The translations under genes were made by a program, and so were the position numbers. Shown here piece after piece: positions 1 through 52,700 of a stretch of 64,000 nt of DNA. The DNA comes from Mantamonas sphyraenae STR306 (taxonomy: Eukaryota; Protista; CRuMs): assembly GCA_026936335.1 (NCBI GenBank), contig JAPMXV010000053.1, positions 378,058 through 442,057 of the forward strand, read 5' to 3'. The notes beneath the pieces are model-generated. The model made no database searches and was not told the DNA's origin. It was given only the letters and a program-made list of their open reading frames with translations. Each line of letters starts with the position of its first letter. Position 1 is the first letter of the stretch.

Positions 1-1045
1 GGCCAAGTGGTTGCCGGGCGCATGGACAACTCGTACAGTGTATTCTTGATGCAGATGTCCCTGGTGAAATTCCGCGGCCTGGCATATGAGGTTTCGCACG
101 CGGACGTGGTGCCGCTTCAAGGGTTCCGTGAGCACCCGGAGATGCCGGGCATGCTGCTTGCTGTGAACAAGAAACACGGAATGTGTGTGGCCATGGATCT
201 GGAGGGTGACGAGATCCAGTATACAGTGCTGCTGGACGGTCCCGGATCGCACCGCCGTGCGGAAGGAATCGCACCCGTGCATGGCAAAGCGGCCGAGTCG
301 GTGTGTGACTCTGCTCGCCCGGGACGCATGGGATCGGTGATGCTGTTGCGCAGCAACGGCACGGTGTCTCATTGGGTACTGGACCGCGACGGTGTGGACA
401 AGGAGAAGATGGCTGCGCTGGCTGGGAAGCGCGCGGCGGCGGCGGCGGCAGACAAGGGCAAGGGCAAGGCAAATACCAAGGCTGAGAAAGGCAAAAGAAG
501 AAGAAAAAGGCGCCAGAGGTGCCGGATCGTAGCGAGAAGCCGACTGTGCGCGGCATGGCGACGGCGCGCAAGTCGACGGGTGGAAAGGCGCCGCGCAAAC
601 AGTTGGCGGCCAAAGCAGCCAAAGCAGTGCGGAAAGAAGCGCGTGCGTACGCACATGGGGAGGAAGATGTGAAGGCGCCGATGTGGAGCGACGACTTTGA
701 GGACGAGGAGCCTGAGGAGAAGCGAGGCAGCCTGTTCAAGACGATGCGTGCGAGGCAAGCAAGCAGGGACTCGGCCGCCGGGTCGGACTCGGAGCCGGAG
801 GATGGAGAAGAAGAGGAAGAGGAAGAGGAAGAGTATGAGATTGACGAGGTCGCGGATGGCGCCGATTTGGACGGCGGGGCGGCAGTTAGTCAGCGAACGA
901 TGCATCTGTTGCACGAGGCCGAGGGTCGCGGCGGGAATCCATTTGCCTCTGTGCCGAAAGCAAGCTCTGGGAAGACGTCACTGTTTGGTGGAGTCAAGAG
1001 CGGGGAAAGGAGCACGGGATCTTTGTTTGGAAGCCGCGGCGCCGT

Positions 1046-1083
<38 letters not shown>

Positions 1084-4000
1084 GCATGCAAAGACAGGAT
1101 TGGGGTGCGCCAAACATGTCTGAATTGGCAATGACGCCGTCGATGAACGACGTGGCACGCAACGAGGGTGTAGCAGGTGGACCGGAGTTTGCAAAGGACT
1201 TCTTTGAGCGACTGCCTGTGATCACATCGAGCGTGGAGCTGAGCTCCACAAAGTTGAAAGCAGATGGGGAGGATTTGAAGAATGCGATGCAGAGGTACGG
1301 ATACATGGGCATCGGGGGCGGCGAGAGCATGGATCTCCAGATTGCGTGCGATCCGTCGATGGTGATTGTCGGCGTGCAGCTGTACCTGTACAGCGAAGCC
1401 GGTGTGATCGGCTCTGTGAGCGTAGAGGGGGAGCGTGTGGTGCCTGTGCGTGCGTACAGGGACAGGCGCGTTCTGGATGTGCCGTTTACAGCGGCGGAAA
1501 TCCTTGCGTCTCCGCACCATGCCACGCTGGAACTGCATCCGCGATCGCAGACATCACGACGCACAGCCATCGAAGGCCTTCAGGTGTATGGAGTTCGTGC
1601 GAGTGAGTTTAAGCTGGCAGAGAAGGTTGCTGCGCTTGAGCGTTTGGAGGCTGAGCGAAAAGCTGTGCAGAAGCGCCTGCGTCGCAAGGTGCCACAGAGT
1701 GCACTGGAGCGCAGCGCAGTGCACGTGCTGCGTATGGCGACTGCATACTTTCTGAAACAGCCGGATGCGCTTGCCGGCGATGGGATGGTGAAGTGGAAGC
1801 AAACTCTGCCTCACAGTCTGAGCCAAGTGTCGATGCTGGTGGTGCACGAGAGCCTGGAAGAGCTGCTGAAGGCGATGCACGACGACGAGGAGAACTTCCT
1901 GCGCACAAAGGACCTTGTACACCTGGAACACCTTGTGCAGCAGCTGTCGGCGTCGCCCGTGTCGTCGCTGGCGGGAACGATGTCGTTGGCTGAGCTGAAG
2001 CACTTGCTGGCAAATATGGGCGCCATTGCACGCGAGCGTCCTCTTAACTTTGGGGCTTTCCTGAAGGAGCATGGGGAGGTCCCGTCCGTGCTTTGCGACC
2101 TGCTGGTGGCGGTGTACGAACGGCGAGCGCTACATGGGGAACAGGTTGTGTCCGCAGTCGAGTCGTTGATGGATGTGCTGTATGGCAATTTGCGTCACCT
2201 GTGGCAGGAATGCATCGACACACATGGCGAGACGGCAAAGGTGCACGCAGTGGCGAGCATCGAACCGGGAATGGCGTTGGTTGTGCGCATGGTGACGTTT
2301 GCATCGTCGTACAAGGTGCGTGCAGCTGCAGACCGGGCGCTGTTCTCTGCGGTGCTGCACACGCTTGCTCGAGAGTCGCACCTGCTGCGGCTGTCGGAGG
2401 ACGGCGTGGTGGGCGGCGAGGACGAAAGTGACATCGGTGTGGTGAGCAATTTGTCAGAGGCCATTCTTGCGTGCCTGCTGAAGAACCTTCCGAGTATGGT
2501 GCACCTGGATGGCGAAGTTGCGTTGAACTACATGCACCTTGTGTCTGCGATGCTGTCCAGTTCGCCTTCGTCTGTGCTACGTGACGTGCGGCGCTTCGTC
2601 GCATGCGGCGTGCAGTTGTTCAAAGACGGTGATACCGTGGCGAGTGGGTTTGTTGGGCACAGTGCGCAGCAGGATGTGGAGCTCATGCTGCTGCAGCTGG
2701 TGCACAGCGTTTTCAAGACACAGCGACGTTGGGAGCGAGAGGCACAGGGTACGGGCGAGGGCAGTGGCGCTGCGAAAGCCAAGACGGCCCCGCGTGTGGT
2801 GGAGCGTTTTGAGAATGTGGTGGAGCGTCTGCGAGTGGAGCTTCACGAGACGGGCCTTGCGCAGACTTTGCTTGAAGCAGCGCAGAGCTTGTTTGCGTAC
2901 TGCGCGTCGCAGAGTGACGACTGGACGGGCGGAGTGGAAGAGAACGAGGGTGGCTTGAGCAGCTTCAAGCAAGCTCTGCTGAGCAAGAAGCGCGAGACAC
3001 CGCCTAGCAGCATTCCGCCGTTCTTTGGAGTGGAGCACGTACGGAAGTACGGGGACGACTTGTTCAAACCGTTCCGACAGATGTACCTGAACGTGCTGCT
3101 CAAGTCTGCGAGCGACTACTTTGGCGTCGTGTGGAAGGGAGTGCGTGAGCGGCACGGCGGCGACGAAAAGAGCGAAACGGTCGAGTCACTGGACGAGACG
3201 GACGCAGCGCTCTTCCACGGCTGGAAAGCGCTGGCGTGCCGTGTGATGTATCAAAGCCAGACGGAATTTGCGACCGAGGCGGCAAAGAAGCTGCTTCTGC
3301 AGCTGACGCGCAAGCGCAGTGCGTTCAACCGTGTGCGCGACTCGTTTGTGCTGGGGCAGGAGAGTGACAAGCTGATGGAAATCGGGTCACGCAGCGAGCA
3401 ATTCACGGGGACAGTGAGCTATGACGACATTGCAGATACGATCGAGTGTGTGACTACGCTTGCTTCGGTGGCAAAGAAGCGGCCGGAGAACTGGCAGGCG
3501 TTTTGTGCTGAGCAGCGTGAGATGCCTGTGTTTCTGTGTCACAGCATGTTCCACATGGTGGAAAAGGCAGTGCTGCCGATGAGCCAACTGCTTGCGTTGC
3601 TGTTTGAAAGCAGCAGCGAAGAAAGGAAACCGAAGGGCAGCGGCGACGGGAGCACGCGCAGCGCAAGTCCGCTTCCTACGCTGGAGAGTGAAGCATCCAT
3701 GGACACGTCTGTGGCAAGTGTAATGAGCAGCGGGGGCGACGAGGACGATGACACGGAGGGTGGTGCGGAGGCTGCGGTGGATGTGGCATCGCTGGTGGAT
3801 GGTGATCTGATGCATCGTTTCGTAAGTGCGTTTATGTTGGAAGTGCGCAACGTGGAGGTGCGGATGAACGTGCGCGATTTCATGCTTGGCGTGTGGAAGC
3901 GAGCAGACAACGAGCAACGAGCTGTGCTGTTTGAGGTGGCTGGCGACTTGCTTGCGAGCCTGCCGTCGTACGGAGTGAACGGCCTGAGTGCAACGGAGCT

Positions 4001-7000
4001 GATGGCGTACATGGTGAGCGATTTGGGCAACAAGGGGACGCAGAGTGGCTCGTTTGCGCTGGACAAGTGGCTGGGCCAGGTGATGGAATGTGTGCAGTCG
4101 CAAAATGCACTGGTGAGCGAGCACAGCCACTCGGGCCTGTATCAAGCACTCGGGCAGGTGCTGGACCTGGGCGGATACTATCTGGAAAGCCAGCCGTGCT
4201 TGGTTTGCAACGACCCAGAGGTGCCGTTTAAGCGCATGTCGTTGGACATGGTGCGTGCAGAGATCAGATACACGGACAGTGCGATGATCACACGCTTCCG
4301 ACAGAGCCTGGCGATCGAGAGTGTGATGGGCACTGTGACACCGCAAAAGGCGGGCAAGAGCGTGCAGACGTTGAATGTCTATTACACGAACCGCACAGTG
4401 AAAGACTTGGCGGAGCTGAAAACGATGAGTGCAAGCGGAGTGGATGTGTGGAAGAAGGCCAAGAGCGTGCGCCTGAAGCCGCGACAAACCGAGGTGGCCA
4501 TCCACTTCCCGGAGCCAATTCTGGCGTCGAACCTGATGATTGAGTACGCGACGCTGCACGAGGACGTGCAGTCGCTTGCCCAGGAGAAGCTGATGTGTCC
4601 TCGTTGCGGCAGGCATGTTCCAGACCGGTTTGGCAACTGCAAGAACTGCGGCGAGAACGCATACCAATGCAGGCAGTGCCGCAACATCAACTACGAGAAC
4701 CTGCAGGCGTACCTTTGCAACGAATGCGGTCATTGTCAGTATGCACGGTACGACTGGTCCCTGAGTCAACGGCAGAATCTGGGCACAGGAGTGATTACGA
4801 CCGACAGCGAGTACGAAGAGGCACTGGAGGCGCTGCGAAAGGAGACAGTGATGACAGACAGGCTATACAAGCAGCTGGGTGCGGAAATCGAACCCCTGAT
4901 GCAGATGATCAATGATGACGGAAGCGAAGAGGCGCGGGAGGCGGTGGCAAAGGCATTGGTTGACGCGGAGGGCGAAGGGAGTTCGGAGTCTCTGGTGCGC
5001 AAGAACATCCGAGGGCTGAGTGCAAAGTATGGCAGGCGTTGCCGCCAAGGGTTTGGTATGCTGAGCAAGCGTGTGCAGCTGCTGATTTCCATTCGGCGGG
5101 AGGTGGTGCGGTACGTGAACCGCAGCGGAGGTGGAGGCGGACATGGACATGAGGGAGGCAGTCGCCCTGCGGCAATGCTGGACAACAGGTGTTTTGGGTG
5201 TGCAAACAACTTCCTGTCGCAGATTGTGATGCTTCTGGAGCAGCTGGCAATGCAAAAGGAAGCAGGCGACAAACTGGTGAAGCTCGGCATTGTACAGGAG
5301 CTGATGGAGCACAGCATGTACCACAGCGACGTGGAGGCGCGCAAGCGTGCACGCAGTGTCATTTGCCAGTTTGTGCGCGGGCGTCCAGAGGCGCTGAATG
5401 TTGTGCTGGAGCACATTTCGTCCAAGATCCGCCTGTGCCTGGCCAACTGGTCGCGTCTGGATGTGCGCACGAGCGTACAGAACGAAATGACGCTGCTGAG
5501 CGAGTTGAGCGTACAGGCGGAGCAGCAGTGGGAGCCGCTGCTGCGTGTGTGCGTCGAGGAGCTGTTGCGAGCACTCGCTGCCGGCTATGACAAGCCCGCC
5601 GTTGTGGATCACATTGTGCGGCCGTTGCTGGCTGTGGTGCACAGATACTGCGGTGGCAAGCGCGGAGAGAATGGCGATAGCAGCAGTAGTAGTGGTGGTG
5701 GCGGTGGTGGTGGTGGCGGTGGCACCAGCGGCGACTCGGAGGGAGCGACGACGTCCTCGAATACGGTGGGTGGCGAAGCAGTTGCGAGTTTGCCTGTGAT
5801 CTCGACGGCAGGATGGCTGGCCGGCAGCGCAGAATTTGCGTCGTGGAACACGGGTGAGTTGCAACAGATGAGTGGACAGCAGGCGAGCGCGTCGCAAGGG
5901 TTTGCCCTGATGCAGAGGCTGTTGTTGAACCGATGCAACGAAAGGGTGCGCGAGATGGCGTTGGACATGCTGATGGCCGTGGTGACGAGCAATGGGTCTC
6001 TTGCGAATCGCCTGGGGGTGCTGAAGCAGCTGATGGGACTGATGGAGAGCGCGCAGGAGCAGCAGCTGGGAGGGGCAAGCAGGCAGCTTTTTGAGGGCAT
6101 TGCAGAGGTGAGCAAGGGCCATGAGGAGGATGTGTGGGCGGCACTGTCCAAGGAGGGCAACGTGGAGGTTCTGTGCGCGCTGATTGTGAAAGAAGTGCAG
6201 GGCATTGTAGCTCTTGAGGGTCAAGTGACGGCCGACTTTGAGCAAGGGTATGTGCTGGCGGCTCTGGTGGACGTGCTGATGCGCATGCTGGGCGTGGAGA
6301 GTGTATTCGAGCACTTTCAGCGTGAGAAACAGGTGCACCGTGTGCTGGAAGCGTTCCTTGCGCTGCGCGGTGTGATTGGCCAAAAGACGCGGTTGACGGA
6401 CACTGCGCTGAAAATGCTGGAGGCACTGATCCAAAGGGTGGTGGAACAGGGTGAGGAGGCGCAAGCAGAGTACAGTGCAGGATGTGTGGCGGCGCTGAGG
6501 AAGCAGCGTGGGGGACGCAAGTCGCGTGCGCCTGTGTTTGTGTACGAGCAGCTGTGCAACCTGATGTGTCCGGTGAAGCCCGATCCGGTGTACGAGCTGC
6601 AGCTGGACAAGTCGCGCACGCAGGAGGAATTTATCCGAGGAAGCATGACGCACAATCCGTACCGTTCGGACACGCTGGGCCCACTGATGCGTGACGTGAA
6701 GAACAAGATCTGCCTGGATCTGGAAATGGCTGGTTTGATTGAAGACGACAACGGGATGGAGCTGCTGGTGGCCGGGAACATCATCAAGCTGGACCTGCCT
6801 GTGAAACTGGTGTACGAGCAGGTTTGGGTGCCGCATTTCCGGGAGCGACACGGTGAGGAGGAGCGCGTGAGTCCGATGCGCGTGGTGTACAGGCTGCAAG
6901 GCTTGGACGGAGAGGCGACAGAGCCGGAGGTGGACTCGCTGGAGGAGGAGAGTGGAGAGGAACGCGACCCGGAAGAGGAGTTTGCGCTGACGGGCGTGAT

Positions 7001-9215
7001 GAGCGAGTGTGGAGGGTTGGAGTTGATGCTGGAGCACCTGGGAGGCATTGAAAGCTTCGAACAGGAACGGGAGCTGGCCAATGTGCTGTTGCGCCTGCTG
7101 GACGCTTGCTGCAAGGTGCGGGCAAACCGACGGGAAATGCTGCGCCTGGGTGCCGTGAGCGTGCTGGTGCGCACGCTGATGGTTGCGTTTGTGCGAGAGG
7201 AGGATGCGCCGTTTGCAGAGGCGTTGTTGTTGATCATGGGACGCGTGGTGCAGGAGGCCAACGTATCGCTGACGCGCTCGAGCAGTGTGAACACGGAAGA
7301 GCTGCGACAGCTGCTGCTGGAACACACGAGCGGCGAGAGTGGCGAGGGAGGCAAGAACGAGTCGGAAGAGAGCCACTCGTATGTGGAGCAGCTGCTGGAA
7401 CAGATGTCGAGTGGCATGGTCAAGAAGAACGGCAAGGTGCGAGAGGCGCTGAACAGCGTGATCTCGTTTTTGACGTTTGGAGAGGCACGCAGCATGACTT
7501 TGCTGTACAAGCACTTTGTGGATGTGATGGATTACGAGGCGTACGACGAGGCGCTGTACGCAGACGAGTCACACACACACAAGCTGGAATGCCTTGCAGA
7601 ACTGTGCGAAAACATCTCGCTGGACGCAAACGGGTCGAAGCTGAAGGACCTGTTCTTGGTGGAGGGGTCGACGAAGCGAGGCATCGAGTACTTGGTGGAT
7701 CGCTTCCCACTGAAGGAGGACCGGGAGAGTGCGACGTGGCAGGCGTCGCTTGCGGCACCTGCTCTTCCGTACGTGCTGCGCATCCTGAGTGGACTTGCGC
7801 GAGGACATGAGGCGACACAGGTGTTGCACATGGAGATGGGCGCGCTGAAGGTGCTGCAGCGACTGGAGGGAGTGTTTGCAGAAGGGAAAATCGGGTCGCT
7901 CGCAGAAAACCTTGTGGAGAGCGTTTGCTTTGCAAACACGGAGACACAAAGTGCATTTGAAAAACTGAACAAGGCACAGGAGGAGAAGAAGAAGAAGCGA
8001 GCGGAAGCGCAGAGGAAGAAGATGATGGCGGCGATGAACATGTCGTACAGCAAGGAAGGAAAGATCGTGGCAAAGAGCGGCCTGCTGGAAGACGACCTGG
8101 AGGAGGAAAGCGGGAGCGTGTGCATGGTGTGCCAAGAAGGGTACAAGTACCGCCCGGAGCAGGTGCTAGCCATCTACACATACAGCAAGGCTGTGGACGG
8201 GTCGCGCGGTGGGATGAGCAGCGTGTCGCATCTGAACATGATCCACATGGAGTGCCACGACGCAGCAGTGGAAGCAGACCGACGTCTGAAGAAGCCGAAG
8301 CGTGAGTGGGAGGGTGCAGAGCTGCGTAACCAGGGCACACGGTGCAACAATCTGCTGCCGACATACGGAAAGACGGTGCCGGAAGGGGCATACGAGCAGG
8401 CGAGCACCCGCTACTGGCAACGGGCGAATGAGCTGGGTGTGGTGATGGGCAGTGCAGGGCAGTACGGGGCGATGATGAACGACCTGACGTACCTACTGAT
8501 GAGGTTTGGAAACAACGAGTCGTTCAGCGTGGATGCACACGGCGGAGGGCGGGAGAGCAACCTGCACTTTGCGACGTACATGGTGCAGCACGGCCTTTAT
8601 CTGTTGCACAAGAGCGGGCGGCTTGGAGAAGTGCAGGCAGACATGACGACGTATCTAGAGACAGACGAGAGTGGCTGGGCAAAGTATGTTGGCCGGAACG
8701 AGGACCACGACGTGGTGCGGTGTGTGTCAACGTTGTGCTGCATGTCTGCCGAGACGTGGGCCACACATCGCATGCTGATCCTGAAGCGGTTGATCCGCTT
8801 TGCGGCGACGACGAGCACGCACATTGCGAGCGTGTCCAGCAGCGAGAGCAGCAGCAGCAGCAGCAGCGGCAGTGGTGGCGGTGGTGGTGGTGAGCAGAGC
8901 CTGTCGGAGAAGGTACGGCCGTACTTGGTGCTGTTTGCACTGGTGAACAGGTTGCAGGAAGTCATCAAGCCGCAGGGCAAGGTGAAGGGAGAGGATGACG
9001 CGTGGCTGGAGTCTGCGCTGACCTATTCTCGGGAGAACGAGGAAGATGTGCGCAAGCAGGTCCAAGAGCTCTTGTCAGACTATGAGGACGAACTGGTGTA
9101 CTTGGAGGCGCCCATGGAGTTTTTCGATGTGATTGGCGTGCTTGGCGACGTCATGGGAGAGGGCAGTGACGCAGATGGGTTTGTTTCGCGATGGGCCGGT
9201 GAAGAGAGTGGATGA
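1..9215 (+). CDS. UBR4: UBR4/BIG/p600-family giant E3 ubiquitin ligase, C-terminal ~3,070 aa; 5'-truncated by the window; 1-nt frameshift at ~493-496 joins frame +1 (1-494) to frame +3 (495-9215)
   Basis: Hallmark UBR4/BIG motifs: GYYLESQPCLVCNDPE, Cys cluster CPRC..NCKNCGENAYQCRQCRNINYE..LCNECGHC, DKSRTQEEFIRGSMTHNPY, EDDNGMELLVAGNIIKLDLPV, YRLQGLDGEATE, hemi-RING CMVCQEGY..HLNMIHMECH, EWEGAELRNQGTRCNNLLP, GGGRESN. Frame +1 upstream reads like the preceding beta-propeller region. Confidence 0.93.
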
Positions 9216-40700: not shown

Positions 40701-43700
40701 GATGAAGGTCAGGGCCTTGGGCAGCACGAGCGGAGTCAACTGCGCGTCGTTGCTGATCACGTTGCCAATCACGGTGACGTCGACCGCGTCGCCAAAGGGA
40801 CCGGTGTAGAAGACGCCGGTGAAGTTGGCGATTCCATCGAGAGCTGCCTTTTCGTACGTGGCTCCTTGTGTGTACCGAGACACCAGGATGCGCACGAGCA
40901 CATCCGATGTGTTGACCCTGTTGCCTGCTGTGTCGATCACTTCGACTTCGGGCTGCACAGGGAACGGTTTCTCCGCCGAGTTGCGGTTGTCGACGAACAA
41001 GGTCATGTTGCGAACAAAGCGGAAGGTGTGTGCGGGTCCATGCACCACCGTGACGCTGCTGCTGGTGGGTTCCAGGCCGCTGGCGGTGTAGGCGAGTGTG
41101 TACGTGCCAGCCGTGGGGGTGATGCGCACATCGGCAAAGTCCACCTGATAGCCATTTGCAGCCGAGGCCACACGCGACAGAGTGCCAGCGCGCAGAACAC
41201 GCCGTCGCTGCTGCTCACAGAGATCGTTACAGAGGGCAGCTGGGCGTCGACAACGAGCTGCGTGCCGGGCGATGTGGGCGTGTTTGCGTCGAGGGCGTTT
41301 CCGCCTGCATCCACAACACGCACTGTCACGCCGTTGACAGGCACATCGGCTGCGTTGCTGCCTGCGTACGTCAGTGTTTGTTTTCCACCGCCCTGTACAA
41401 GCAGATGTTCGGCAACGCCGCTGGAGATGTTGACCTGTACCAGTGCAGGCTGCAGGTTGCCTTGTGTGACCACCAGCACATGCACGCCAGCACGCGGGCG
41501 CAACAAGCGCACTCCGTCGATGGTCACCACGCCTGCCTGCATGGTGTATCTGACACGTCCGGCCAGAATCGGCGTGGCCAGAGGTTGCCGGTTTGCATCC
41601 AGGGCGCCTGGACCGCCGCTCTGCACGCTGACGTCGATCTCGCGAGAGATCGTGTCTGTGTCGCCCACAGCCTCTCCTCCCGCATCGTATGCGCGCACTG
41701 TAAACGAGCTGACAAGGGAAGAGATGTTGCTGGTGGCTGTCACTGCCGAGGTGGTGCTGGAAAGGCGTGCAGCAGGCCCAACCACAATGCGCACGTGTGA
41801 TTGGGCGCTGATCAGTCCTGGCGCACGGTACTCGATGCCATACACGCCCAAGGGTGGGGAGAGCAACGCCAGCGAAGCAAACACAGCCGTGCCGTTGCGC
41901 ATGCGCTCGACAGAACCCGTGCTGCGCAGCGTGGCGGTGTTGTTCAGAAGGACAGCCGTGATGTCCTTTTCGTTGGGATGGTCGTACACCCACGAGCCGC
42001 CGGCATCTTTCTGTCGAATCTGCACAGTGGCCAGTAGGGACTCGAATGTGGACGATCGTTGGGAGAGCGGGTTGAATTCGCTCACGAGCGTGTGCGGCGG
42101 CCCAACGGTAACCACAACTGCGAGGTTCACTGGGATCCACGTGCGCGAGGCAAAGAAAGTAAGCGTGTACGTGCCGGCAGGTGGCTTTAGGAGCACCACC
42201 GACAAGTTGGCGTACGAAGGGAGCACAAATCGAGCAATGTCACCCTGCAACACGCCAGAGTTGTCCACGCTGACGTCCACAGAGGTGAGACCACCTAGAC
42301 TGCTTGTTTCCACACCCCCTGCGTCAAGGGCAGCCACAATGACGGGTTCAATGGTCACGGCGTCCACAGACGCGTAAACGAGCGTGGCAGGGGCCTGGCG
42401 AATGCCAAGACTCTCTGCCAAACCCTGGGTGACGATGACATCCACAGTGGCATTTTGGAGACCTTGCGAGGAGAAATGCAAGGAGTGTTGGCCTTGCAGA
42501 CCTGTGCGGATGGTGAGAGTGCGGAAAACGGCGTCCCCGTTCACTGTGGTTTCCGACGTACCCGAAGGCAGATCCAAAGACTGCGACCACACCGACACGG
42601 TGCGATTGAGCACGTCCAAATTACCAAGGGTGTTGTTGGCAACGTCGACGACACGCACAGTGATTTCTGGGACGGTGTAGAGGCGGGTAGAGGCGAACGT
42701 GCGCTTCCAGGCCGTGACCAGTGCGAGGGCACGTGGCTGGCCAACTCTCACGGTGACGTTGGCGGTAGTTGGGGCCAATCCAGTCATGTTGAACACAACG
42801 CGATACGTTTGTGCCACAGGAAGCGTTAAGGACATGTTTGCAAACACCGCAGCGCCGTTGGAGACGCTCGATGGGAACACGGTTGCGAAACCTTGGATTT
42901 GGGCCGCCATCGTGCCGATGTAGTCGGTGACAACATTGTTACCGGCGTCCACGACAGACACAGAAATGGAAGGGACCGCTGTTGTGGTCTCGGCCGGGGC
43001 ATACACATGCTGGGGCACAACGCGGTCCAACCTCACCGCTGGCCCTGTGACAACCTGCACGGCCACATCGCCGCTTTGGAGGGATGCAGCCGAGAAGCGC
43101 AGTGCATACCAACCGACAGCAGGTGCAGAAAAGGCCACTGTGGTAAAGGTGGCGTTGCCTGCGGTGCTATTGACGGGCGTCAGGCCCGTAGCAACCAGTG
43201 ATGCGTTCAATGTCTGGACGCTCACCAAACGGTGCGACGCGTCAAAGGAGCCCACAGCGTTGCCTCCGTTGTCGTAGAGGATCGCTTGGATCGGTGGCAC
43301 GGGACTGCTTGTGCGCGACGGCACGGTGGCTGTGATCGGGGGAACAACAATCTGTGTGGGAGGGCCAGGGTACACAGAGAGCGACACGGTGACATTTCGC
43401 AGCGCATATGCAGACATGACGATGCCGTAAGAGCCGATGGGAATGCGTCCCGTGAGCTTGAGATCGGTGAAGGACACGCGGCCAGAGTTGGCGTCGACTG
43501 GTTTCGTCAGCGTGCCCTGCAGAGTGACGCCAGCGATGGAGACATTCAATGCAGCGTGCACGTGCACATCACCCGTGGTCACGGTATCGCCTGCGTCTCG
43601 AAGCTCCACGGTGATCGCAGGCAGAGGCACAGAGGCGATGGACGCGTAGGAAAGGGTCGTCACGGGGGCAATGCGAGTCAGCGCGTACGGCTGACCCACA

Positions 43701-46700
43701 CCCACCTGGACAGCCACAGACGTATTGCGCAGACCCTGCGCGAGGAACCACAGCGTGTAGGAGCCGTTCTGTGGCGATTGCAGGGCAAGATCGGAAAACA
43801 CGGCGCGGCCAACCATGCTGGTGACCACCTGGACGCCCACGAGCACACCACCAGCGCTGGCAGACGCGCTCACAGTGCGGTTGAGTCCATCGAGTGCACC
43901 CAGCATGTTGTTGCCAGCATCTACGACGCGCAAGTCGACGGCGCCCAAGGCTGAAAACACACGGCTTTCAACCACCACAGAGGCACTGGCAGGCGAGTGC
44001 ACCACCAGCGCTGTAGGCGGTCCCGTGATCACGTCGATGGTCATGTCGACGGAGAAGAGACCCGTGCTGGCGAAGCGCAGGACGTACCGGCCGACGCGAG
44101 GTGTTGTCAGAGTCAGGTCTGCGAATGGATGAGTGGCGTTTCGCTGCAGCGTACCCTGCAGCTGGGCAAGCTGTGTGCTGTTGAGCAGTTGCACAGATGC
44201 GTTGCGGGCAACCATCTGTGCGGCGTCGACAGCGTTCCCTGCTGCATCGCGGCCGATCAGAAGAGTGGCGTTGATGGGCGTGTTGAGAACCGCGTGGACA
44301 CTGCCCAGGTGGGCAGAGGGCACATCCAGAGACACGACCTGGCCCGGTACAATCTCCAGGGCCACCGATGTGTTGAGAAGAGATGCTGCATAGAACACAA
44401 GGGAGAAGTTGGCTGTGGGCGGGCGCAGCAACTGCAGGCCCGTCAGCGTGGCCACACCGTTGGTGACAGAGACAGACGTGGGACCAGATGTCTGCAGCGC
44501 AGCAGGAACGTCCACGTTGACGATGATGTCAGAGGCCGTTGGCACAAGGGTCCCCGCGACATCTCGAGCCTGCACCGTCACTGCACCCAGCGCAACCTGC
44601 AGGTTAGTTGCAAGCGACTGGGCGGCGCCAGACACAACCGCCAGCTGAAAGGGAACACCCACCGTGACGCGGATGGACACAGAGACATTGCCTAGCAGCG
44701 GACTGTGGAAGTTGAGCGCGTAGTCGCCAGCCACAGGCTTGAGCAACTGCACGGCGTCAAACACGACCACCGCGCTCGTGGCAGTCACATTGAGCGTGCC
44801 AGCGAGGTCCAATGTAGCGTTGGCGCCCGTCAAGAAGAGGTTCTGGCCAGCAAAGCGAGGCGCGGAGACAGCAGTGCCGCTTGCGTCGACGGCTGTGAGG
44901 CGGATGGTCGGTGCTGCGGTCACAGCTGCGGCCTGCACGGTGGAGGATGTGGTGAACACTGCAAGCAGACGCAAGGGCAAGCCGCCGTTAACTTGCACGC
45001 CCACCGTGGCAGTGCCGACGTTGGGTGTGCTGACACGAAGCACATACGCACCCAGAGCAGGTGCTTGCAGCGACACGTTGGCAAACGAGGCCAAACCGTT
45101 GACGAGCGTGGCTGTGGTCGTGCTGGTTACAGTTGCACTCGGTTGCAGCGCCAGAGTGAGCGTGCGGTTGCTGTCGCTGACGATCGTGTTGTTGCCTGCA
45201 TCAAAACCTTGCACCGTCAACGCGCCCAGGTAAGCGGTCTGCGCAGTCTCGACGCTGATCGACACCGGGGAGACGATGCGAAGGGTATGGATGGGACCCA
45301 CCGAAACGTTGAACGTTGTGGTGAGCACGGGAAGCCCAGCTGTGTTCAGCTCCACCGCATACACGCCGGCCACAGGGGATGCGAGTGCGAGCGAGGACAC
45401 AGAGACGTTGCCCTTCAGCATGGTCTCGGACGAGGAGCCGAGTTGCACTCCGTTGCTGTCTTTGATCTTGATCAAGACAAGACGATCGACATCGAGGCCC
45501 ACGAGCGAGTTGTCACCGGCATCGCGTGTTTGCACCGAGATCGTGCCCAACGATGTGGACACACGCGAAAGCACCGTGGCCGGCAGGTTGAGCAGAGCCA
45601 TGTGTGTAGCAGCGCCCGGAAGCACTTCTACAGTGACATTTGCGCCGATCAACCCGGTCGCACCAAACTGCAGCGTGTAGTTGCCTCGCGCAGGAGAAGC
45701 CAGGCGTGCGTTGTCAATGGTAGCCGCACCACGGTTACTGAGAGCCGAAAGGACACCCTGGAGCATTGCCTGGTGCGGCGACGGGAGCGACGCAGTGACG
45801 GTGACGGGTGAGACGCTCGTGGTCGTGCCACTTGCATCTTGCACGGTCACACTGACGGCAGGCAGAGCAGTCAGCGCGGAGCTGCTCACTTGCAGGGACG
45901 TAGGCGACGCCACAAGTTTGTAGGGTGCACCACTGGAGATGGTCAAGGCGATGGTCGCGTTGACGAGACCCAGCGTACCCACCTGGAGCGTGTAGGCATC
46001 GGGGACGGGCGCAGCCAGAGTGGCACCAACAAACTGTGCAGCACCTGCAGCCTGACTGTACGTGGTGGCCACCCGCACACCTCCAATCACGTCGAGGACC
46101 ACGGTGCGGTTGAGGGTGTCGAGGCCACCCAGTACGTTGTTGCCGCCGTCGCGCACAACGACGCCGATGGTGGGCAGAGCCACGGAGACGCTTGTGTCGA
46201 GGGCCAACGTGTTGTCGGTGTTGTTCAGCGTCAGCTTTGTTGGGGCGCCATGCACAATGTTCACCGAGGTCTGTGCCACCACCAGAGCAGGAGACACAGA
46301 CGCCACAAAGGTGTACAATCCCACCGTGGGTGTGGTCAGGGACAGGCCCGTAAAGTTGGCCACTCCTTGCACCATGGCTGTGGACGCAGTGCCCGCAAGT
46401 GCCGTGGCGGTCACGTCCACACCGTTGAAGTAGACAGTGAGGGTGGCCGACGTGGTTGTGGTGTCATTCGACAACAACGTCTCGTTCTGGTGGTTCTGTG
46501 TGGCGACGGTGATGTGCGGCAGGGCCACGCTTGCGGTTGCGTTGACATCGCCCAATCCGCCCAAATCGCTCAGCAGTGTCGTGTACTCGGGCGTGGTCAC
46601 AAACATGCCATGCACTTCAAACTCATACAGCCATCCGCCATCTGTGGCTGTCACAAGCGTGCCCATGGCTCCCTCGCTGTTGTTGAATCCGACGCGGAAA

Positions 46701-49700
46701 TGCGACGAGCGCACCTCGCTCGCCAAAAAGTCCACACAGAGGCCGACATCGTTGGCATCGGAGGGAACGACACGACAGGGACGCTGTGTACCGAGCGCCG
46801 ATGCGCTCTGCTTGGTCACGCGTTGTACAATGGTCTGCCAAGTTTGCGTGGCCGCAATGAAAGCCTGCACCTCGTAGTACGGCGGCGTGTTGCGGCACGA
46901 CTGGTACCACGACAGGATGATCTCGTTGGCAAAGGCCTCAATGGGCAGATTGACCTGTGCATACACCCAATGTGTGTTGTTCTGGGCAAACTGCAGGCCG
47001 CACTTGAAGCCTTGGTTGGCGTCGGTCTTTTCACAGCAGCGGTCGTTGTCGTGGATGCCTGCAGGGTACACACCGTCGGTGACGCCGGTGGCACTTCCTG
47101 TGGCGGTGCCGTTTGTGGCCAGGTTCTCAAAATAGCGCAGGCCGAGAGCCACGCGGTCGGCGACGGCAAAGTCGAGCTCGCTCTTTGTGCGACACAGAGG
47201 CGAGAACGGGTCCACGTACGTAAACTGGACACCCGAGGCCGACGCAACGTACTGCTGGGCATTGTTGGACACAGACAAGTCGTATTTTCCCGTGTCCTGC
47301 TGGGGTGCCGTGCAGATCACCTGCGTGCTGGACACAAACTGGGGTGCCTTGGTGTTTACAAGCTGGCCAAAGCGGCACTGAAGGGCATCGCTGTTGATGA
47401 ATCCCGATCCAGCGACAGTGATGGTCTCGCCGCCGGTGGTCTGGCCAACCTGAGGAGTAAAAGCACCCACCGTCTCGGGCGTGTAGTACGTCATGGAGGC
47501 GTTCTGGCTGGTTGCACTGACCGAAAAGTTGAGGCCGTTGTTGGTCACATTGACGAGGACAGTGCTGCCAGCCGCGCCGGCCGGAGATGTGCACAGGAAC
47601 TGCGTGCGCGACACGTATTGGACAGAGACACACGCCTGACCGCCCACTTGGGCGTTCAGATAGCCGTTGTTGACAAAGTTGTTGCCCGAAATGGTGAGGA
47701 TGGTGGCGCCGGTGGACGGCCCTGTGGTGGGGGTCATGGCCGTCTGGTTGGCCGGAGCGAGAACCTGCACGGTCCAAGGGCTGCCTGCAATGCTGCCCAC
47801 AGCGGTGGTGACGTCGATACGGTACAAATCCGCACCTGCGCCAGCGACGTATTGGACACGGTACCTGTTTGCAGTGGCAAAGGCGACGGAGCTGGGCACG
47901 GCTGCACCGTCACTCAGGCGGGTGACGTTGATGGTGAACACATCGGTGCCCACAGTGCGTGCATTGCCGTAGACATCACGTGCAAACACGTCGAAGCTGT
48001 TTGTGACGTAGGGACTGGCCTCCGAAAGGGCGACACCGGACGCAGTGCACGCGGCAGCGTGAAGGGCGTTGGGCGTGACGGTGACGTTGGTCGCACTCAA
48101 CACGTCGCTGGGAGTCGCTGGAAAGGCAAGGATGGCGATGTTGCGGCTGCCGCCGGGGTTGGTCACAGAGGGAAGATCGACCCACTTGCCGCGAACAGAC
48201 CCCGAGGCCACCAGCGTGCCGTTGTAGACGTCGATGGCTCGGAAGTAAGTGCCGCTGCTGGCGCCCGTGTTGATAAAGGTGCGACCGCCGACCTGGACAC
48301 CATCGCTGAGGCGCAGTTTGGCGATGAACGCGCGTTCCTTCTCGCCGACAGTCTGTGCGTCGAAACCATCCTGTGACACCGAGCCTGCGACATAGACAAA
48401 GGACCCATCCGACGTTGCCATGAACGCAGCGCTACCCGCAGGGTTTGCCATGGACCACGTCCACAGCACATGGCCGGTGGCGTTCATGCGGACAACGATG
48501 GCCGTGTCTGGGTTGGGCTCCAAGCGAAGACCACACAGAAGGAACTCACCGTTGAACATTGCACCGGCATACGTATCGGTTGCCACAGATGACGGCAAGT
48601 TGTCACGGAAGCTCTGTTCGAGCACACCGGCGCGCGTAAAGCGGCTGATGAAGATGTCACGACCGCCGACAACGGAGTGACCTCCAAAGTCGCCGAGCGT
48701 ATCACCGACGACGTAGATACGGTCGTCTTGTGCTCGGTAGAACACCGCGGACGTCGATTCTGATTGTGTGCTGCCAAACTGGCGCTCCCACACAAGATCA
48801 CCCGTGGCGGAGTACTTCACCAAAAGAATGTCGTTCGCGCCGAGATTGGTATCAACGACTGAACCCTCCGTTCGCCCAGCAAAGACGGCACTGCCATCAG
48901 TGGGATCGACAGCGACGTCGACAAAGGATTCTGAGGCACTGGAGCCGCGTGCACGGGCCCAGCGGAGAGCGCCTGTGGTTGCATCAAAGGCAAGGGCAAG
49001 GGCATCGGCGCCCCCACCTTGGTAAGAATGTCCCAGGAACGTGCTGGAGGACTCGCCGGCAACAAAGAAGGTGTTGCGTGCCTCGTCCAAGGCGCAGCGC
49101 CACGGTTTATCCTGGCCAGCAGCATCAAAGACGTTGCTCCACACCAGGGTTCCTGTGGGCGCAATCTTGGCCACATAGACGGCGTGATCGGCCACAACGA
49201 CCTGTGAACCATCTGCTTTGATGTAGTTTCCGGTCACACGTGCAGCGACATAGACATTGCCATCTGCATCGAGCGCCTGGCCGGTTGCAATGGCACCTGA
49301 GCTCGAGGTGGTCGTACCGACGATGGTGCCCCAATCGGGCGACCCAGAGGCAAAGGGATAGCCAATGGGCGAGCGGATGCTGAGAGCATGCGTGCCGGCC
49401 ACGGTGGTGAGGTAGGTGACCTGTTGCTGACCCTGCAACGCCACGAGAGGGCCGATTGTGCCCTGCACGTTACCCAGCGCGGCACTGAACGCGTTTGCCG
49501 TCACTGCGGTGCGATTGTTGGAGAACTGGTCTCGTTCCTGAAGGGCCACGAGACCCTGGACACCGGCCATGGCAGCATACAGGCTGCTGCCGGTGATGAT
49601 GGTCTTTGTTCGATCCATTGGGGCAGGGAGCACGTTGATGGTCGCAGGTGAGCCGATGATGTGTTGGCCACGGTACTGCACCTGCAGCGAGGCCGTGCCA

Positions 49701-52700
49701 CGCAGATTGGAGGAATAGGAAACAGCAAAGACACCTTGGGTGGCGAGCGACACAGTGACACTGCCTGTGCTGAGAGAAGTGACAATCAGAGCTGCATCTG
49801 TTGCGGTTGAGCTCAGCAGAGTGTTGTTGAAGCGGTCACGCAACTGGATGGTGACACCTGTGCTGGCCACACCGGCTATCACGGTGCTCTGGACATCGAG
49901 GAGCTGCGAGCGCGAAGGATCGCCCTGAACAGGGGTGACCACAATGGCAAAGGGAGACCCGACGATACCCCGCGTCCACGAGAGATCGGTGATGCTGACA
50001 GCGTACGTGCCTGCAATTGTGTAGTTGAGCAGAGCTGAGTACACCCCGCCTGCATGTGGAAGCACTGTGCCGTTGCGCACGCCCTGGATGGCAACAGCAA
50101 AGGCGTCGGGCTGCGTGGACAACGGATTGCCGAACACATCACGCGCCTGGACGGTGGCGTTGAAGGATGCGTCTGCAGCGACGGTGCCTGTGGGTGTGGA
50201 CACGACGGTGCTGTGGAGAACAGAAACTGCCGCCGGAAGCACCGAGACCGTGTGCGATGAAATGAGGCTGGGCCCCGGCTGCACAGAAACGTGAAGGTTA
50301 AAGACACCGCGCGTCGTGAGATTGAACGTGAGGCTGTGCATGCCTGCACCCAGGTACTGCGTGGAGTGCAAGGCATTTGCAAGGACGACGTCGCCGCCGG
50401 CAGTGAGGTTGTTGCCAAACTGATCACGGAGCTGGATGCGCACAGTGTGCGTCGTACCGGCAACGACAACCTGCGGAACGTCGTACACCGAGGAAGAGCT
50501 TGCCTGCACGACGTCTGTGGCCACAGTAAACGGCAAATTGCCTCCAATCTGAGCATCCTGGTTGAGGGTGACGGTGAGCGGGTGTGTTCCGCTGACGGTG
50601 GCTGCGACAGAGGTGGAGTAGCGCCCAGTGGCCATGCGTCGTGTGGAAACACGTGCATAGTCGGTCTCAATGTCAACTGTGTCGTAGAAGATGGTGGGTG
50701 CGGCGTACCTTGCAGCGGGCCCGCGATCGATGAACGGGGCTGTGGGAATAACGACGTCCGTGTGCCACAAACCAAGCCCGACGACCTCGACGCTGCCATC
50801 TGCCGTGTCGATGGTAGCGTATGGGTTGGAAGCATAGTAATCTGATGTCAACGTGTTGTAGTTGGGGAACCCCTGGCCGTAGCCCTTGGCGTAGATGTCG
50901 TAGAGGCCTGGCTGGATGGCGACCGGAGCAGGGAGCTCACAGCGCATGTAGCTGCCCTGGATGGTTGTGCTTGCACACAGAAAGGTGTCGATGACGGCCA
51001 CGTTGGACGTACTCGTCTGCATGCGCAGGGAGATGTTGCGCGGCTGCAGACCTGCCTTGATGTACGCACCCATGGCGTGAATGTTGATCGGGCGCACGAC
51101 ACGCAAGGTGTGGCCCAACCAACCAAGCCAGTTGGTTTGGGTGGCCGGAGTGTTGTCCGCATAGGCGATCAATTGGTGGACGGGGCGCGCGCTGCGTGTG
51201 CGCGGCATGTGTGCGCGTGCGTAGTGTTCTGTGAACCACAGGGACCCTGCGCCGTACACGTTTGCGTTTCCACCTGTGTCGGGGCGTTGCAGGGACCTGT
51301 TTTCTTCCGGCTTTGAGAAGCGGCCGTGCATGACGATGGAAATAGCCCCGTCTGCAGAGTCGGTCTTGATGGGATTGGTGCCACCGACCGGATTGTGGTT
51401 GTAGTTGGGGAACGTTGCGTTGTACCCCGTGGCAGCAACCCAATAATCACCAGGAAGCAGATAGATGGGCGCATCAAGGTCTAGCCGCATGTAGCCATTC
51501 TGGGGCTGTGAGTTGACGATGTACTGACGCGTGAGGATGGTGTTGCGGTAGTCTGCGGCAGTAATCCAGACGTTGACGTCGCTGGGAGGCTTGTCAGCAG
51601 ACAGGAACGCACCGAGGGCGGTTACGTAGATGGGCCGGTTGACGCGAAAGGGAAGGCCAAACGAGTAGTCGGGCGCGTCGTGCTGGTTGCCGTTGATGCC
51701 TGCTGGCGCGGTATGGAAGAGTTGGTGTTCGAGGTCGGAGACGTTGGCGACGTTGCCTAGCGTGTCGCGCAGGACGGTGTCGACAAGCACTTTTGTGGTG
51801 CCTGCGACGGTGGTGCTTGCAACCTGCGTGTTTGCCGAGTGGGCAGCAGTGGGTACGTTGGAACGCACCGTCAACGCAAAGCTGATTGCAGGTACGTTGA
51901 CGAGAGAGACAGCATAGGTACCAGTGACGTTGATCATGGTCGTGGCTGCATAGATGCCATTGCCGGTGTACTCCATGGTGATGTTGGGCAACCCCTGGAT
52001 GGCGACGATCATGGGGAGTGCGGAGGGCGCGGTCCGGTCGTTGCCGTACTGGTCACGCGTCTGAACACGTAGGATCTGAAAGTGCTGTCCGGCGACGGCT
52101 TCTGTGGACGAGGCGAGTTGGACGGTTGTCGGGTAGTGAGCAGGTGCTGGCACGATGGTGATCTGTTGTGCGCCGATCCCAATGGCCTGGCCCGAGAGTT
52201 GGACGGAGACCGAGTGTTGCACAGCCTGAGTGGGTGTGAAAGACGCGGTGTAGGTGCCGTTGGCAAAGGGACCGTGCCACACGAAGGAAGCCGTGGCAGG
52301 CGTGGCCACGACAGCAAGGTTTCCGGGCAGTGTTTGGTCAAACGCATTGCCGAATGTATCGAGCAGTGCAAATGTAAAAGTGATCGGCTGACCGGCGACG
52401 GAAGTTGTCGGGGCGATGGTCTGCACTTTGGAGGAAGGTGCATGTGGGGCAGCCGGATTGACGGCAAAGGTAAACGGGGAACCGGCGATGTGGAGGGAGG
52501 CGTTGTAGCGCAAGGCATAGGAGTAGTTGCCTGCACGAGTGAGGGTGACACTGGGCACATCCCAGATGTTGACGCTGCCGCCACGAAGAGAAGCCGAGGT
52601 GGTGAAAGGCACAGGGCCGGTCAACACGGCTTGGAAGGATGTGTCGAGGGCCTCAGTGCGTGCTACTCCTGCGGCGTCGCGCGCCAGGATGGCTGGGGAG

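What the first reader, a model, noticed from the sequence alone, without database searches (positions are those of the whole stretch)
555..626. Histone H3 N-terminal tail embedded in the UBR4/BIG ubiquitin ligase
Seen: the UBR4 frame reads [23 protein letters not shown] (561-620). Established: H3 residues 6-25 are [20 protein letters not shown], so 19/20 are identical, keeping the K9, S10, T11, K14, R17, K18 and K23 sites. It lies in a low-complexity linker before the DOC-like region, with no histone fold after it, and its codons fit the G-rich host gene. Histone mimics I know of (e.g. the G9a ARKT motif) are only a few residues long, and I know of none in UBR4. Inference: a decoy or bait tail that lets H3 writers (K9 methyltransferases, Aurora B, GCN5) mark the ligase and H3 readers (chromo- and bromodomains, 14-3-3) dock on it, coupling chromatin signalling to ubiquitylation; it could alternatively serve as an NLS. 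An ATG in good context (ggcATGG, 555) sits immediately before the motif and ~60 nt after the frameshift at 493-496. If that frameshift is real, the downstream protein would begin with an H3-like N-terminus.
Basis: partly seen in the sequence, partly recalled or inferred. Interest (0 to 1): 0.9.

Follow-up and report, generated by a model that had tools for sequence, protein, structure and literature searches.

The report
Histone H3 tail copy inside UBR4
The giant quality-control ubiquitin ligase UBR4 of the deep-branching protist Mantamonas sphyraenae carries, in a floppy internal linker, a 20-residue stretch 95% identical to the histone H3 tail that selection seems to have kept; known histone look-alikes are about 4-5 residues, and what this one binds is untested.

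Summary
Window 561-620 (+) encodes 19 of 20 residues of histone H3 positions 6-25. It lies in frame in a UBR4/BIG-type ligase gene of Mantamonas sphyraenae (25.06 Mb, 78-contig assembly).

- **Real DNA, not a recent copy.** Three read-derived assemblies are colinear across the motif. Thirteen of the 19 conserved residues use other codons than the genome's H3 genes. Synonymous sites are saturated and codon choice fits the host gene. The peptide has therefore been kept by purifying selection (or convergence).
- **The frameshift is an assembly error.** Those assemblies lack 2 bases at 493-496, which joins the upstream and downstream frames. The motif is internal; it is not a new N-terminus.
- **Position.** It sits in a roughly 265-residue predicted-disordered linker between the beta-propeller and the DOC-like beta-sandwich. 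In human UBR4 these domains form the appendage that projects into the ligase cavity.
- **Distribution.** None of 154 proteins fetched in the UBR4/BIG searches carries it. No close relative could be examined, and there is no RNA or protein evidence.
- **Function.** Untested. My best guess is a tethered docking or modification site for H3-tail-handling proteins.
- **Related sites.** Two other genes in this genome begin with H3 1-10 and H3 1-8 look-alikes.

I rate it a new variant of histone mimicry.

The parts
1..381 (+). End of the UBR4 beta-propeller (reading frame 1 of the window). It continues from upstream DNA, G000:C53 before 378058.
   Evidence: Frame 1 is open from L014 8591 into the window. 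Its blade-like segments align with the propeller part of other UBR4/BIG proteins. The UBR box lies upstream at about L014 8580-8720.
382..1179 (+). Long disordered linker (about 265 aa) between propeller and beta-sandwich. It has a basic block (about 430-650, including a K-run and the H3 copy), then an acidic block (about 655-870), then Ser/Gly-rich sequence.
   Evidence: AF2 pLDDT is below 50 for ORF residues 1-221. The linker is variable and much shorter in other UBR4/BIG proteins. Its codon-position composition is the same as in the folded part, and only this frame is open.
493..496 (+). Two surplus A bases in the assembly, the apparent frameshift. Without them frame 1 upstream joins the frame of 519-9215.
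   Evidence: Contigs of runs X1, X2 and X3 (depth 38-72) all lack 2 bases here and are otherwise colinear over 1-1031 or 1-965. The corrected reading is continuous.
555..560 (+). ATG GCG (M-A) directly before the copy. This is either H3 M0-A1 with RTKQ deleted, or a coincidence; an ungapped alignment instead pairs the R at 549-551 with H3 R2.
561..620 (+). The H3 tail copy: 19/20 identical to H3 residues 6-25 (S/T22 is replaced by A).
   Evidence: It shares 43/60 nt with the own H3 gene. Thirteen of 19 conserved residues use another codon and pS = 0.78. Codon log-likelihood is -22.2 under host usage against -29.6 under H3-gene usage.
621..680 (+). Basic continuation with faint resemblance to H3 26-38 (RKEA against RKSA; VKAP against VKKP). 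Not significant.
   Evidence: Local alignment score 19, shuffle P = 0.125.
1046..1082 (+). (AGC)n poly-serine run inside the linker. All short-read contigs break here.
1182..1599 (+). DOC-like beta-sandwich, which I equate with the BS1 domain of human UBR4.
   Evidence: AF2 strands at ORF residues 240-360, pLDDT 60-87. Foldseek hits 9d9z and 9hxw (human UBR4; E = 3e-12 and 2e-11) and APC10/DOC1 (E about 5e-4, TM about 0.54 by target).
4752..5123 (+). UBR4-like domain (PF24079).
   Evidence: E = 4.3e-12.
6645..9137 (+). C-terminal E3_UbLigase_R4 domain (PF13764), the catalytic region of UBR4. The stop codon is at 9213-9215.
   Evidence: E = 4.8e-244, covering profile positions 1-809 of 809.

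Best explanation
The motif is a translated, selectively maintained copy of the internally readable part of the H3 tail (residues 6-25). It is built into the flexible linker between the beta-propeller and the DOC-like beta-sandwich of Mantamonas sphyraenae UBR4.

Shown:
- It is real DNA and in frame.
- It is ancient at the nucleotide level yet 95% identical at the protein level.
- It is predicted to be disordered.
- It is unique to this protein among non-histone sequences of the genome.

Inferred: it works as a tethered H3-tail surrogate. Proteins that recognise or modify the H3 tail as a linear peptide around K9-S10, K14, R17-K18 and K23 dock on it or mark it. Candidates are acetyltransferases with bromodomain readers, S10 kinases with 14-3-3, and histone-tail carriers. 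This would either bring them into the ubiquitination cavity of the ligase or place the ligase's location or activity under the signals that act on H3.

The missing residues 2-5 are the part of the tail whose readers need a free N-terminus, which would be useless at an internal site.
For: - **Identity and uniqueness.** 19/20 to the own H3, E = 2e-10. The core occurs only in the 4 H3 genes and here.
- **Selection.** 13/19 conserved residues use different codons, and Ser10 is TCG here against AGC in H3. pS = 0.78 is saturated. A neutral simulation at that divergence keeps a mean of 1.7/20 residues and never reached 19 or more in 200,000 trials. Codons fit host usage (LL -22.2; expected -20.9 +/- 2.7) and not H3-gene usage (-29.6). 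Codons shared with H3 number 6/19, against 7.75 expected from an independent draw.
- **Coding context.** It is the only open frame. Codon-position composition matches the rest of the gene. There is no pyrimidine-rich or 3' splice-like signal in 300-1300. The frame is continuous with upstream once the 2 surplus bases are removed.
- **Accessibility and position.** AF2 predicts disorder. The motif lies between the propeller and the DOC-like sandwich. [quoted passage not shown]
- **Candidate partners exist.** At least 6 bromodomain loci, two 14-3-3 genes and 12 SET-domain hits.
- **Recurrence.** Two other non-histone genes of this genome start with H3 1-10 and H3 1-8 look-alikes.
Against: - There is no RNA or protein evidence that the segment is expressed. 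All runs found are labelled DNA by guess, and splicing cannot be formally excluded.
- No close relative could be examined, so the selection argument rests on one comparison with present-day H3 genes of the same genome.
- No binding or modification was tested.
- The motif lies in a generally basic stretch with a K-run that could act without any H3 specificity.
- The canonical H3K9me machinery (Pre-SET, chromo shadow) was not detected.
- The lineage-specific linker is absent from all 154 proteins fetched in the UBR4/BIG searches, so it is not needed for core UBR4 function.
Confidence: 0.5

Rival explanations
1. Histone-type nuclear import signal. The copy is kept because the karyopherin that imports H3 recognises an extended stretch of the tail (K14 and K23 as anchors, from my own knowledge of Kap123/Importin-4), so it carries part of the UBR4 pool into the nucleus.
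For: An extended-footprint binder would explain why about 20 residues are constrained rather than 4-5. K14 and K23 and their spacing are kept. The motif lies in an accessible basic linker. The H3 tail is described as the NLS for Importin-4 (abstract of 10.1101/181321).
Against: A classical K-run NLS-like element lies 20 residues upstream, so import would not need an H3 copy. No karyopherin was examined. Generic NLSs do not need 95% identity to H3.
Confidence: 0.17
2. Intramolecular pseudo-substrate or ubiquitin-acceptor arm. The lysine-rich H3-like stretch dangles in the ligase cavity. There it either occupies a substrate site (autoinhibition, possibly folding back on the acidic block that follows) or serves as the preferred auto-ubiquitylation site.
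For: It is positioned in the propeller/BS1 appendage that lines the cavity in human UBR4. An acidic block follows immediately. From my own knowledge, H3 K14/K18/K23 are natural ubiquitin acceptors in other systems.
Against: Neither role requires near-perfect H3 identity; any basic lysine-rich segment would do. No structural or biochemical test was done.
Confidence: 0.13
3. Non-functional or untranslated. The segment is a relic of a captured H3 gene fragment, or it lies in an intron or alternative exon, and its H3 likeness has no present role.
For: It was found in one species only. It lies in a fast-evolving, lineage-specific linker; 3 of 5 heterozygous SNPs nearby are non-synonymous. There are no expression data.
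Against: Saturated synonymous divergence with 19/20 residues kept is incompatible with neutral decay. It is the only open frame, it has host codon usage, and there are no splice-like signals. It is in frame with both flanks after the assembly error is corrected.
Confidence: 0.1
4. Internal start. A shorter isoform begins at ATG 555, giving a protein whose mature N-terminus (A-T-A-R-K-S...) imitates a histone N-terminus.
For: ATG in ggcATGG context directly before the copy. Two other genes of the genome do carry H3-like true N-termini.
Against: Its premise, a real frameshift upstream, is removed by the read-derived contigs. The ORF is continuous through the ATG. No promoter or transcript-start evidence exists. 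The sequence after Met lacks R2-K4, which N-terminal H3 readers use.
Confidence: 0.05

Closest known systems
Cellular H3K9-like histone mimics: the G9a/GLP (EHMT) ARKT/ARKS-type motif and its substrates WIZ, LIG1, ACINUS, CDYL; SETDB1 automethylation motifs
   Same: A non-histone protein carries an H3-like linear motif in an accessible region. H3 writers can mark it and chromodomain or Tudor readers can bind it (PMC10611923; abstracts of 10.1101/2025.10.22.683908 and PMC7585203).
   Different: Those are 4-6 residue motifs centred on a single lysine in chromatin enzymes of animals. This one is a 20-residue, 95% identical copy spanning seven modifiable sites, in a cytosolic quality-control ligase of a protist. 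No modification has been shown for it.
Viral histone mimics (influenza NS1 H3K4-like tail; the coronavirus ORF8 ARKS motif, from my own knowledge)
   Same: An H3 tail sequence is reused outside a histone to engage host chromatin factors. Histone mimicry is defined in that literature as short linear motifs (PMC11738798).
   Different: That survey defines mimicry motifs as 5 residues. They belong to pathogens and act as decoys against the host. This one is endogenous and four times longer.
N-terminal H3 mimics read by PHD fingers or UHRF1 (PAF15 from my own knowledge; H3 N-terminal mimicry network, PMC8166343)
   Same: Mimicry of an H3 tail by a non-histone protein linked to ubiquitin signalling. 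The two other Mantamonas genes that start with H3 1-10 and 1-8 look-alikes resemble this class.
   Different: The UBR4 copy is internal and lacks residues 2-5, so readers that need the free A1 N-terminus cannot use it.
Canonical UBR4/BIG/p600 ligases (human UBR4-KCMF1-calmodulin complex, plant BIG)
   Same: The host gene has the UBR box, propeller, DOC-like sandwich, UBR4 domain and C-terminal ligase domain.
   Different: None of the 154 proteins fetched in the UBR4/BIG searches has any H3-tail pentamer. Their propeller-sandwich linker is short (about 45-95 aa in two I measured on alignment A2) against about 265 aa here.

Membership tests
UBR4/BIG giant E3/E4 ubiquitin ligase (host gene) | C-terminal E3_UbLigase_R4 domain (PF13764) and UBR4-like domain (PF24079) | tested here: met
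   E = 4.8e-244 over the full profile, and E = 4.3e-12.
UBR4/BIG giant E3/E4 ubiquitin ligase (host gene) | UBR box upstream in the same gene | tested here: met
   PF02207, 31.1 bits (cut-off 25.2), at L014 about 8580-8720, roughly 2 kb upstream of the motif. The gene has further frame changes upstream that were not resolved.
UBR4/BIG giant E3/E4 ubiquitin ligase (host gene) | Fold match to solved UBR4 | tested here: met
   Foldseek: 9d9z_B E = 2.9e-12, 9hxw_A E = 1.9e-11. The sandwich also matches APC10/DOC1.
Histone H3 (a true histone or H3 variant) | Histone fold (PF00125) following the tail | tested here: not met
   No PF00125 hit in ORF 519-9215. The genome-wide PF00125 search lists no hit in the window. 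BLASTP similarity ends after 21 residues.
Histone H3 (a true histone or H3 variant) | Tail at the protein's N-terminus | tested here: not met
   The ORF is continuous upstream once the 2 surplus bases are removed. The motif lies at roughly residue 2,500 of a protein of about 5,400 residues.
Histone mimic (H3-like linear motif in a non-histone protein) | H3-tail sequence in a non-histone protein | tested here: met
   19/20 identity to H3 6-25 within UBR4.
Histone mimic (H3-like linear motif in a non-histone protein) | Located in an accessible, disordered region | tested here: met
   AF2 pLDDT about 25 across ORF residues 1-221. This is a prediction from a shallow 9-sequence alignment.
Histone mimic (H3-like linear motif in a non-histone protein) | Modified by H3 writers and/or bound by H3 readers | not testable with these tools
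   This needs proteomics, peptide pull-downs or enzyme assays. Bromodomain, 14-3-3 and SET genes are present. Pre-SET and chromo shadow were not detected, without a positive control.
Histone mimic (H3-like linear motif in a non-histone protein) | Maintained by selection (conserved in relatives) | tested here: inconclusive
   The codon analysis implies long-term constraint. No orthologue from another Mantamonas could be retrieved.
H3-type karyopherin NLS | K14 and K23 anchors at H3 spacing; binding to Importin-4/Kap123 | not tested
   The lysines and their spacing are present in the sequence. No karyopherin was analysed; a full-length one exceeds the size limit of the complex predictor.

The most novel reading that the evidence does not exclude
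Mantamonas uses long copies of the H3 tail on non-histone proteins as a system. An internal 6-25 copy sits on the UBR4 ligase, and true N-terminal 1-10 and 1-8 copies sit on two other proteins, one of them an ankyrin-repeat protein. The cell's histone writers, erasers and readers would then write and read a 'histone code' directly on ubiquitin-system and other proteins, coupling chromatin-state signalling to protein quality control.
Probability: 0.2. Interest if true: 0.85.

Novelty: new variant of a known kind. Interest (0 to 1): 0.62.

Why it matters
Histone mimicry is known only as motifs of about 4-5 residues, mostly in chromatin enzymes and viruses.

- **Scale of the mimic.** A 20-residue copy spanning K9, S10, T11, K14, R17, K18 and K23 would be the most extensive cellular mimic. 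It would be the first in the UBR4 family, whose substrate-binding appendage it sits in.
- **What the constraint implies.** If it is functional, whole multi-site stretches of the histone code can be transplanted onto other proteins and remain under the same constraint as in H3. This offers a natural test of which H3-tail partners read the tail out of nucleosome context.
- **Evolutionary position.** Mantamonas (CRuMs) branches near the base of Amorphea, which bears on how early such cross-talk arose.
- **Practical caution.** Anti-H3 modification antibodies would be expected to cross-react with a band of about 600 kDa in this organism. The published assembly also carries a 2-base error that breaks this gene.

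Tried and rejected
- **Recent copy of an H3 gene or assembly chimera: rejected.** The DNA shares only 43/60 nt with the four identical H3 genes, and short-read contigs are colinear across it.
- **Real frameshift at 493-496: rejected**.
- **A variant H3 gene with matching codons as donor: none found.** The only other tail-like hit, C45:396265 (TARKTTGG), sits among stop codons and is chance. The copy at the C14 contig end is cut before the tail.
- **Flanking target-site duplications or retroposition marks: none.** Only 9-17 nt chance repeats.
- **Extension of homology to H3 26-38: not significant,** P = 0.125.
- **Orthologues from close relatives: none found.**
  - The representative search had a best hit of 28% identity.
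  - The word-index searches had a best hit of 36% in the C-terminal domain.
  - No hit examined was from Mantamonas.
  - Two metagenome scans found nothing.
  - These blanks say nothing about whether relatives have the motif.
- **RNA evidence: none usable.** No run on record is RNA. The paper lists four M. sphyraenae runs including one RNA run, and four runs of one study were returned, so one of X1-X4 may be RNA. I cannot tell which, so I make no claim.
- **Orthologue search for the ankyrin protein with the H3-like N-terminus:** only generic ankyrin hits.
- **Complex prediction: not run.** Reader binding depends on modifications, and the import receptor exceeds the size limit.
- **Handling of the corrected reading.** The 2-base-corrected joined reading was made only inside a script to check the frame. 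It was not sent to any search or fold tool; the pieces on either side of the break were searched apart.

Full report
**What is there.** Window 555-626 on the + strand reads M-A, then a 20-residue stretch (561-620), then K-A. The 20-mer equals histone H3 residues 6-25 except at position 22. There it has A where the genome's own H3 has S and animal H3 has T.
- BLASTP against the own H3 gives 19/21 identities with E = 2e-10 for the pair, and the similarity stops there.
- A degenerate DNA pattern for the [10 protein letters not shown] core finds five places in the 25 Mb genome: four identical canonical H3 genes and this site. The reversed control pattern finds none.
- Chance is excluded.

**The organism and the host gene.** The own H3 protein is identical to a Mantamonas plastica entry of EukProt. 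The assembly statistics (25,061,354 bases, 78 contigs, about 59% GC) match the published FALCON assembly of Mantamonas sphyraenae. That assembly has 25.06 Mb, 78 primary contigs and 59.19% GC, was built from PacBio RS II reads polished with Racon and Pilon, and is diploid (PMC10492846).
- The motif lies in ORF 519-9215 (2,898 aa), which carries the UBR4-like domain and a full C-terminal E3_UbLigase_R4 domain (E = 4.8e-244).
- Upstream DNA of the same contig holds a UBR box and then a beta-propeller that runs into the window in frame 1.
- The host is therefore a bona fide UBR4/BIG ligase of roughly 5,400 residues, with the motif near residue 2,500. The gene start and several upstream frame changes were not resolved.

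**The frameshift.** Frame 1 upstream and the frame of 519 downstream are offset at the A-rich run 493-505.
- Logan contigs of three runs from one study span the region at depth 38-72 with no joints. All lack 2 bases at 493-496.
- Removing two bases joins the frames into one continuous reading through a K-run and into the motif.
- The runs differ from each other at scattered SNPs in a mosaic way, as expected for a heterozygous diploid. None of the SNPs lies in 555-626.
- I conclude that the frameshift is a residual long-read indel. These runs probably come from the same strain as the assembly, so they are independent of the PacBio technology but not of the organism.

**Is it translated?** No RNA run is on record, so this rests on sequence.
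- The motif's frame is the only open one in 497-1200.
- Codon-position composition of the linker and motif (G about 0.45-0.53 at third positions) equals that of the folded part of the gene.
- Nothing in 300-1300 looks like the pyrimidine-rich introns seen elsewhere in this genome, and no 3' splice-like signal occurs.

**Age and selection.** The motif shares 43/60 nucleotides with the H3 genes.
- Thirteen of the 19 conserved residues use a different codon. Ser10 is TCG against AGC, the two codon families that are not connected by a single synonymous step.
- The proportion of synonymous differences is 0.78, which is saturated.
- The motif's codons are what the host gene's usage predicts (log-likelihood -22.2; expected -20.9 +/- 2.7). 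They do not fit the H3 genes' usage (-29.6).
- The number of codons shared with H3 (6/19) is no more than an independent draw gives (7.75 +/- 1.7).
- No nucleotide trace of common descent is left, yet 95% of the residues are. Under neutral change at that divergence a simulation kept 1.7 of 20 residues on average and never reached 19.
- Whether the stretch descends from a captured H3 5' end or arose by convergence, the H3-like peptide has been held by purifying selection, and that also implies translation in this frame.
- The caveat is that this is one comparison within one genome.

**Where it sits.** An AF2 model of window:519-2400 (9-sequence alignment, mean pLDDT 60) gives pLDDT of about 25 for residues 1-221, which include the motif. 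A beta-sandwich and helical repeats follow.
- Foldseek matches the folded part to human UBR4 (9d9z, 9hxw; E = 3e-12 and 2e-11) and matches the sandwich to APC10/DOC1.
- Aligned with other UBR4/BIG proteins, the segment between the last propeller blade and the sandwich is a variable linker of about 45-95 residues in two aligned homologues. Here it is about 265 residues: a basic block that includes the motif, then an acidic block, then Ser/Gly-rich sequence.
- In the human complex, the propeller, UBR box and beta-sandwich 1, together with KCMF1 zinc domains, form the largest intrusion into the cavity of the ring-shaped E4 ligase (PMC7618180). By homology the H3-like arm would hang at or in that arena.

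**Distribution.** None of the 154 proteins fetched in the UBR4/BIG searches (plants, animals, protists and metagenomes) contains any H3-tail pentamer.
- The nearest homologues are only 28-36% identical.
- No Mantamonas orthologue is in the collections for this region.
- Two metagenome scans found nothing.
- Conservation in close relatives therefore remains untested.

**Mechanism.** Known histone mimics are short linear motifs of about 4-5 residues (PMC10611923, PMC11738798). A constraint over 20 residues suggests either several partners or one partner with a long footprint.
- The genome has bromodomain proteins, two 14-3-3 genes and SET-domain proteins.
- No Pre-SET or chromo-shadow domain was detected, and chromodomains occur only in three long ORFs (737-2454 aa). 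These negative searches had no positive control.
- The copy lacks residues 2-5, the part of the tail whose readers need a free N-terminus. That fits an internal site (inference).
- My best account, at about 0.5, is a tethered H3-tail surrogate that recruits or is marked by H3-tail-handling proteins. This would link them to the ligase cavity or place the ligase under H3-type signals.
- The rivals are a histone-type import signal, a pseudo-substrate or auto-ubiquitylation arm, a silent relic, and an internal-start isoform.

**Related observation.** The same genome has two more non-histone genes with H3-like true N-termini.
- The first exon of a gene at C11:37125 starts with H3 residues 1-10 exactly. 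Its codons again differ from the H3 genes, and there is no histone-fold hit on that contig.
- A 431-residue ankyrin-repeat protein at C61 starts with H3 1-6 plus R8.
- Together with the internal 6-25 copy, this hints that H3-tail mimicry is recurrent in Mantamonas, but I did not establish that those genes are expressed or conserved.

**Verdict.** The evidence favours a functional, unusually long endogenous histone mimic in UBR4. The frameshift-based N-terminus idea is rejected. Function, expression and conservation remain open and can be tested with public data named in PMC10492846.

Noticed in passing
G000:C11:37125-37360 (+) = L022:1498-1733: The first exon of an intron-bearing gene begins with H3 residues 1-10 exactly (M-ARTKQTARKS) and then continues with unrelated sequence. 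No histone fold is detected on that contig and the exon pieces have no Pfam domain. Its codons differ from the H3 genes at most positions (Ser10 is TCG, as in the UBR4 copy).
   Followed up: partly
G000:C61:312298 (-) = L025:2507-3799:-: A 431-residue ankyrin-repeat protein starts M-ARTKQTVR (H3 1-6 plus R8). This is the earlier first-reader note s1-590326. A homologue search returned only generic ankyrin proteins and no orthologue.
   Followed up: partly
window 493-496: The published assembly has 2 surplus A bases that break the UBR4 reading frame. Three short-read-derived assemblies lack them.
   Followed up: yes
L014 (G000:C53:368058-378057): about 5163-5392, 6368-6743, 8226-8353, 8591-8894: The upstream half of the UBR4 gene changes reading frame four more times, with overlapping open frames. 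These may be further residual indel errors or short introns. Not resolved.
   Followed up: no
window 366, 443, 489, 859, 886: Heterozygous-looking SNPs appear in a mosaic pattern among runs X1-X3: 366 and 489 are synonymous, while 443 is A>V, 859 is G>D and 886 is V>A. This is consistent with the diploidy reported for this strain, and it shows that the linker tolerates amino-acid polymorphism while the 72-nt motif has none (small numbers).
   Followed up: partly
window 41006-55486 (-): A 4,827-residue uninterrupted ORF with Filamin and IPT/TIG repeats and a weak GEX2-N Ig-like hit. It is a giant Ig-repeat protein and was not studied further.
   Followed up: partly
G000:C24, C41, C55, C65 (L001-L004): There are four histone gene clusters with H3, H4 and H2A side by side. 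The four H3 genes are identical over the tail-coding stretches that the patterns matched. A fifth H3 copy at the end of contig C14 is cut by the contig end.
   Followed up: partly
protein P0028 (185 aa, from the representative search): A predicted protein made of three tandem H3 N-terminal fragments (MVRTKQTARKST...), apparently a mis-called array of H3 pseudogene pieces from some other organism. Unrelated to UBR4.
   Followed up: no
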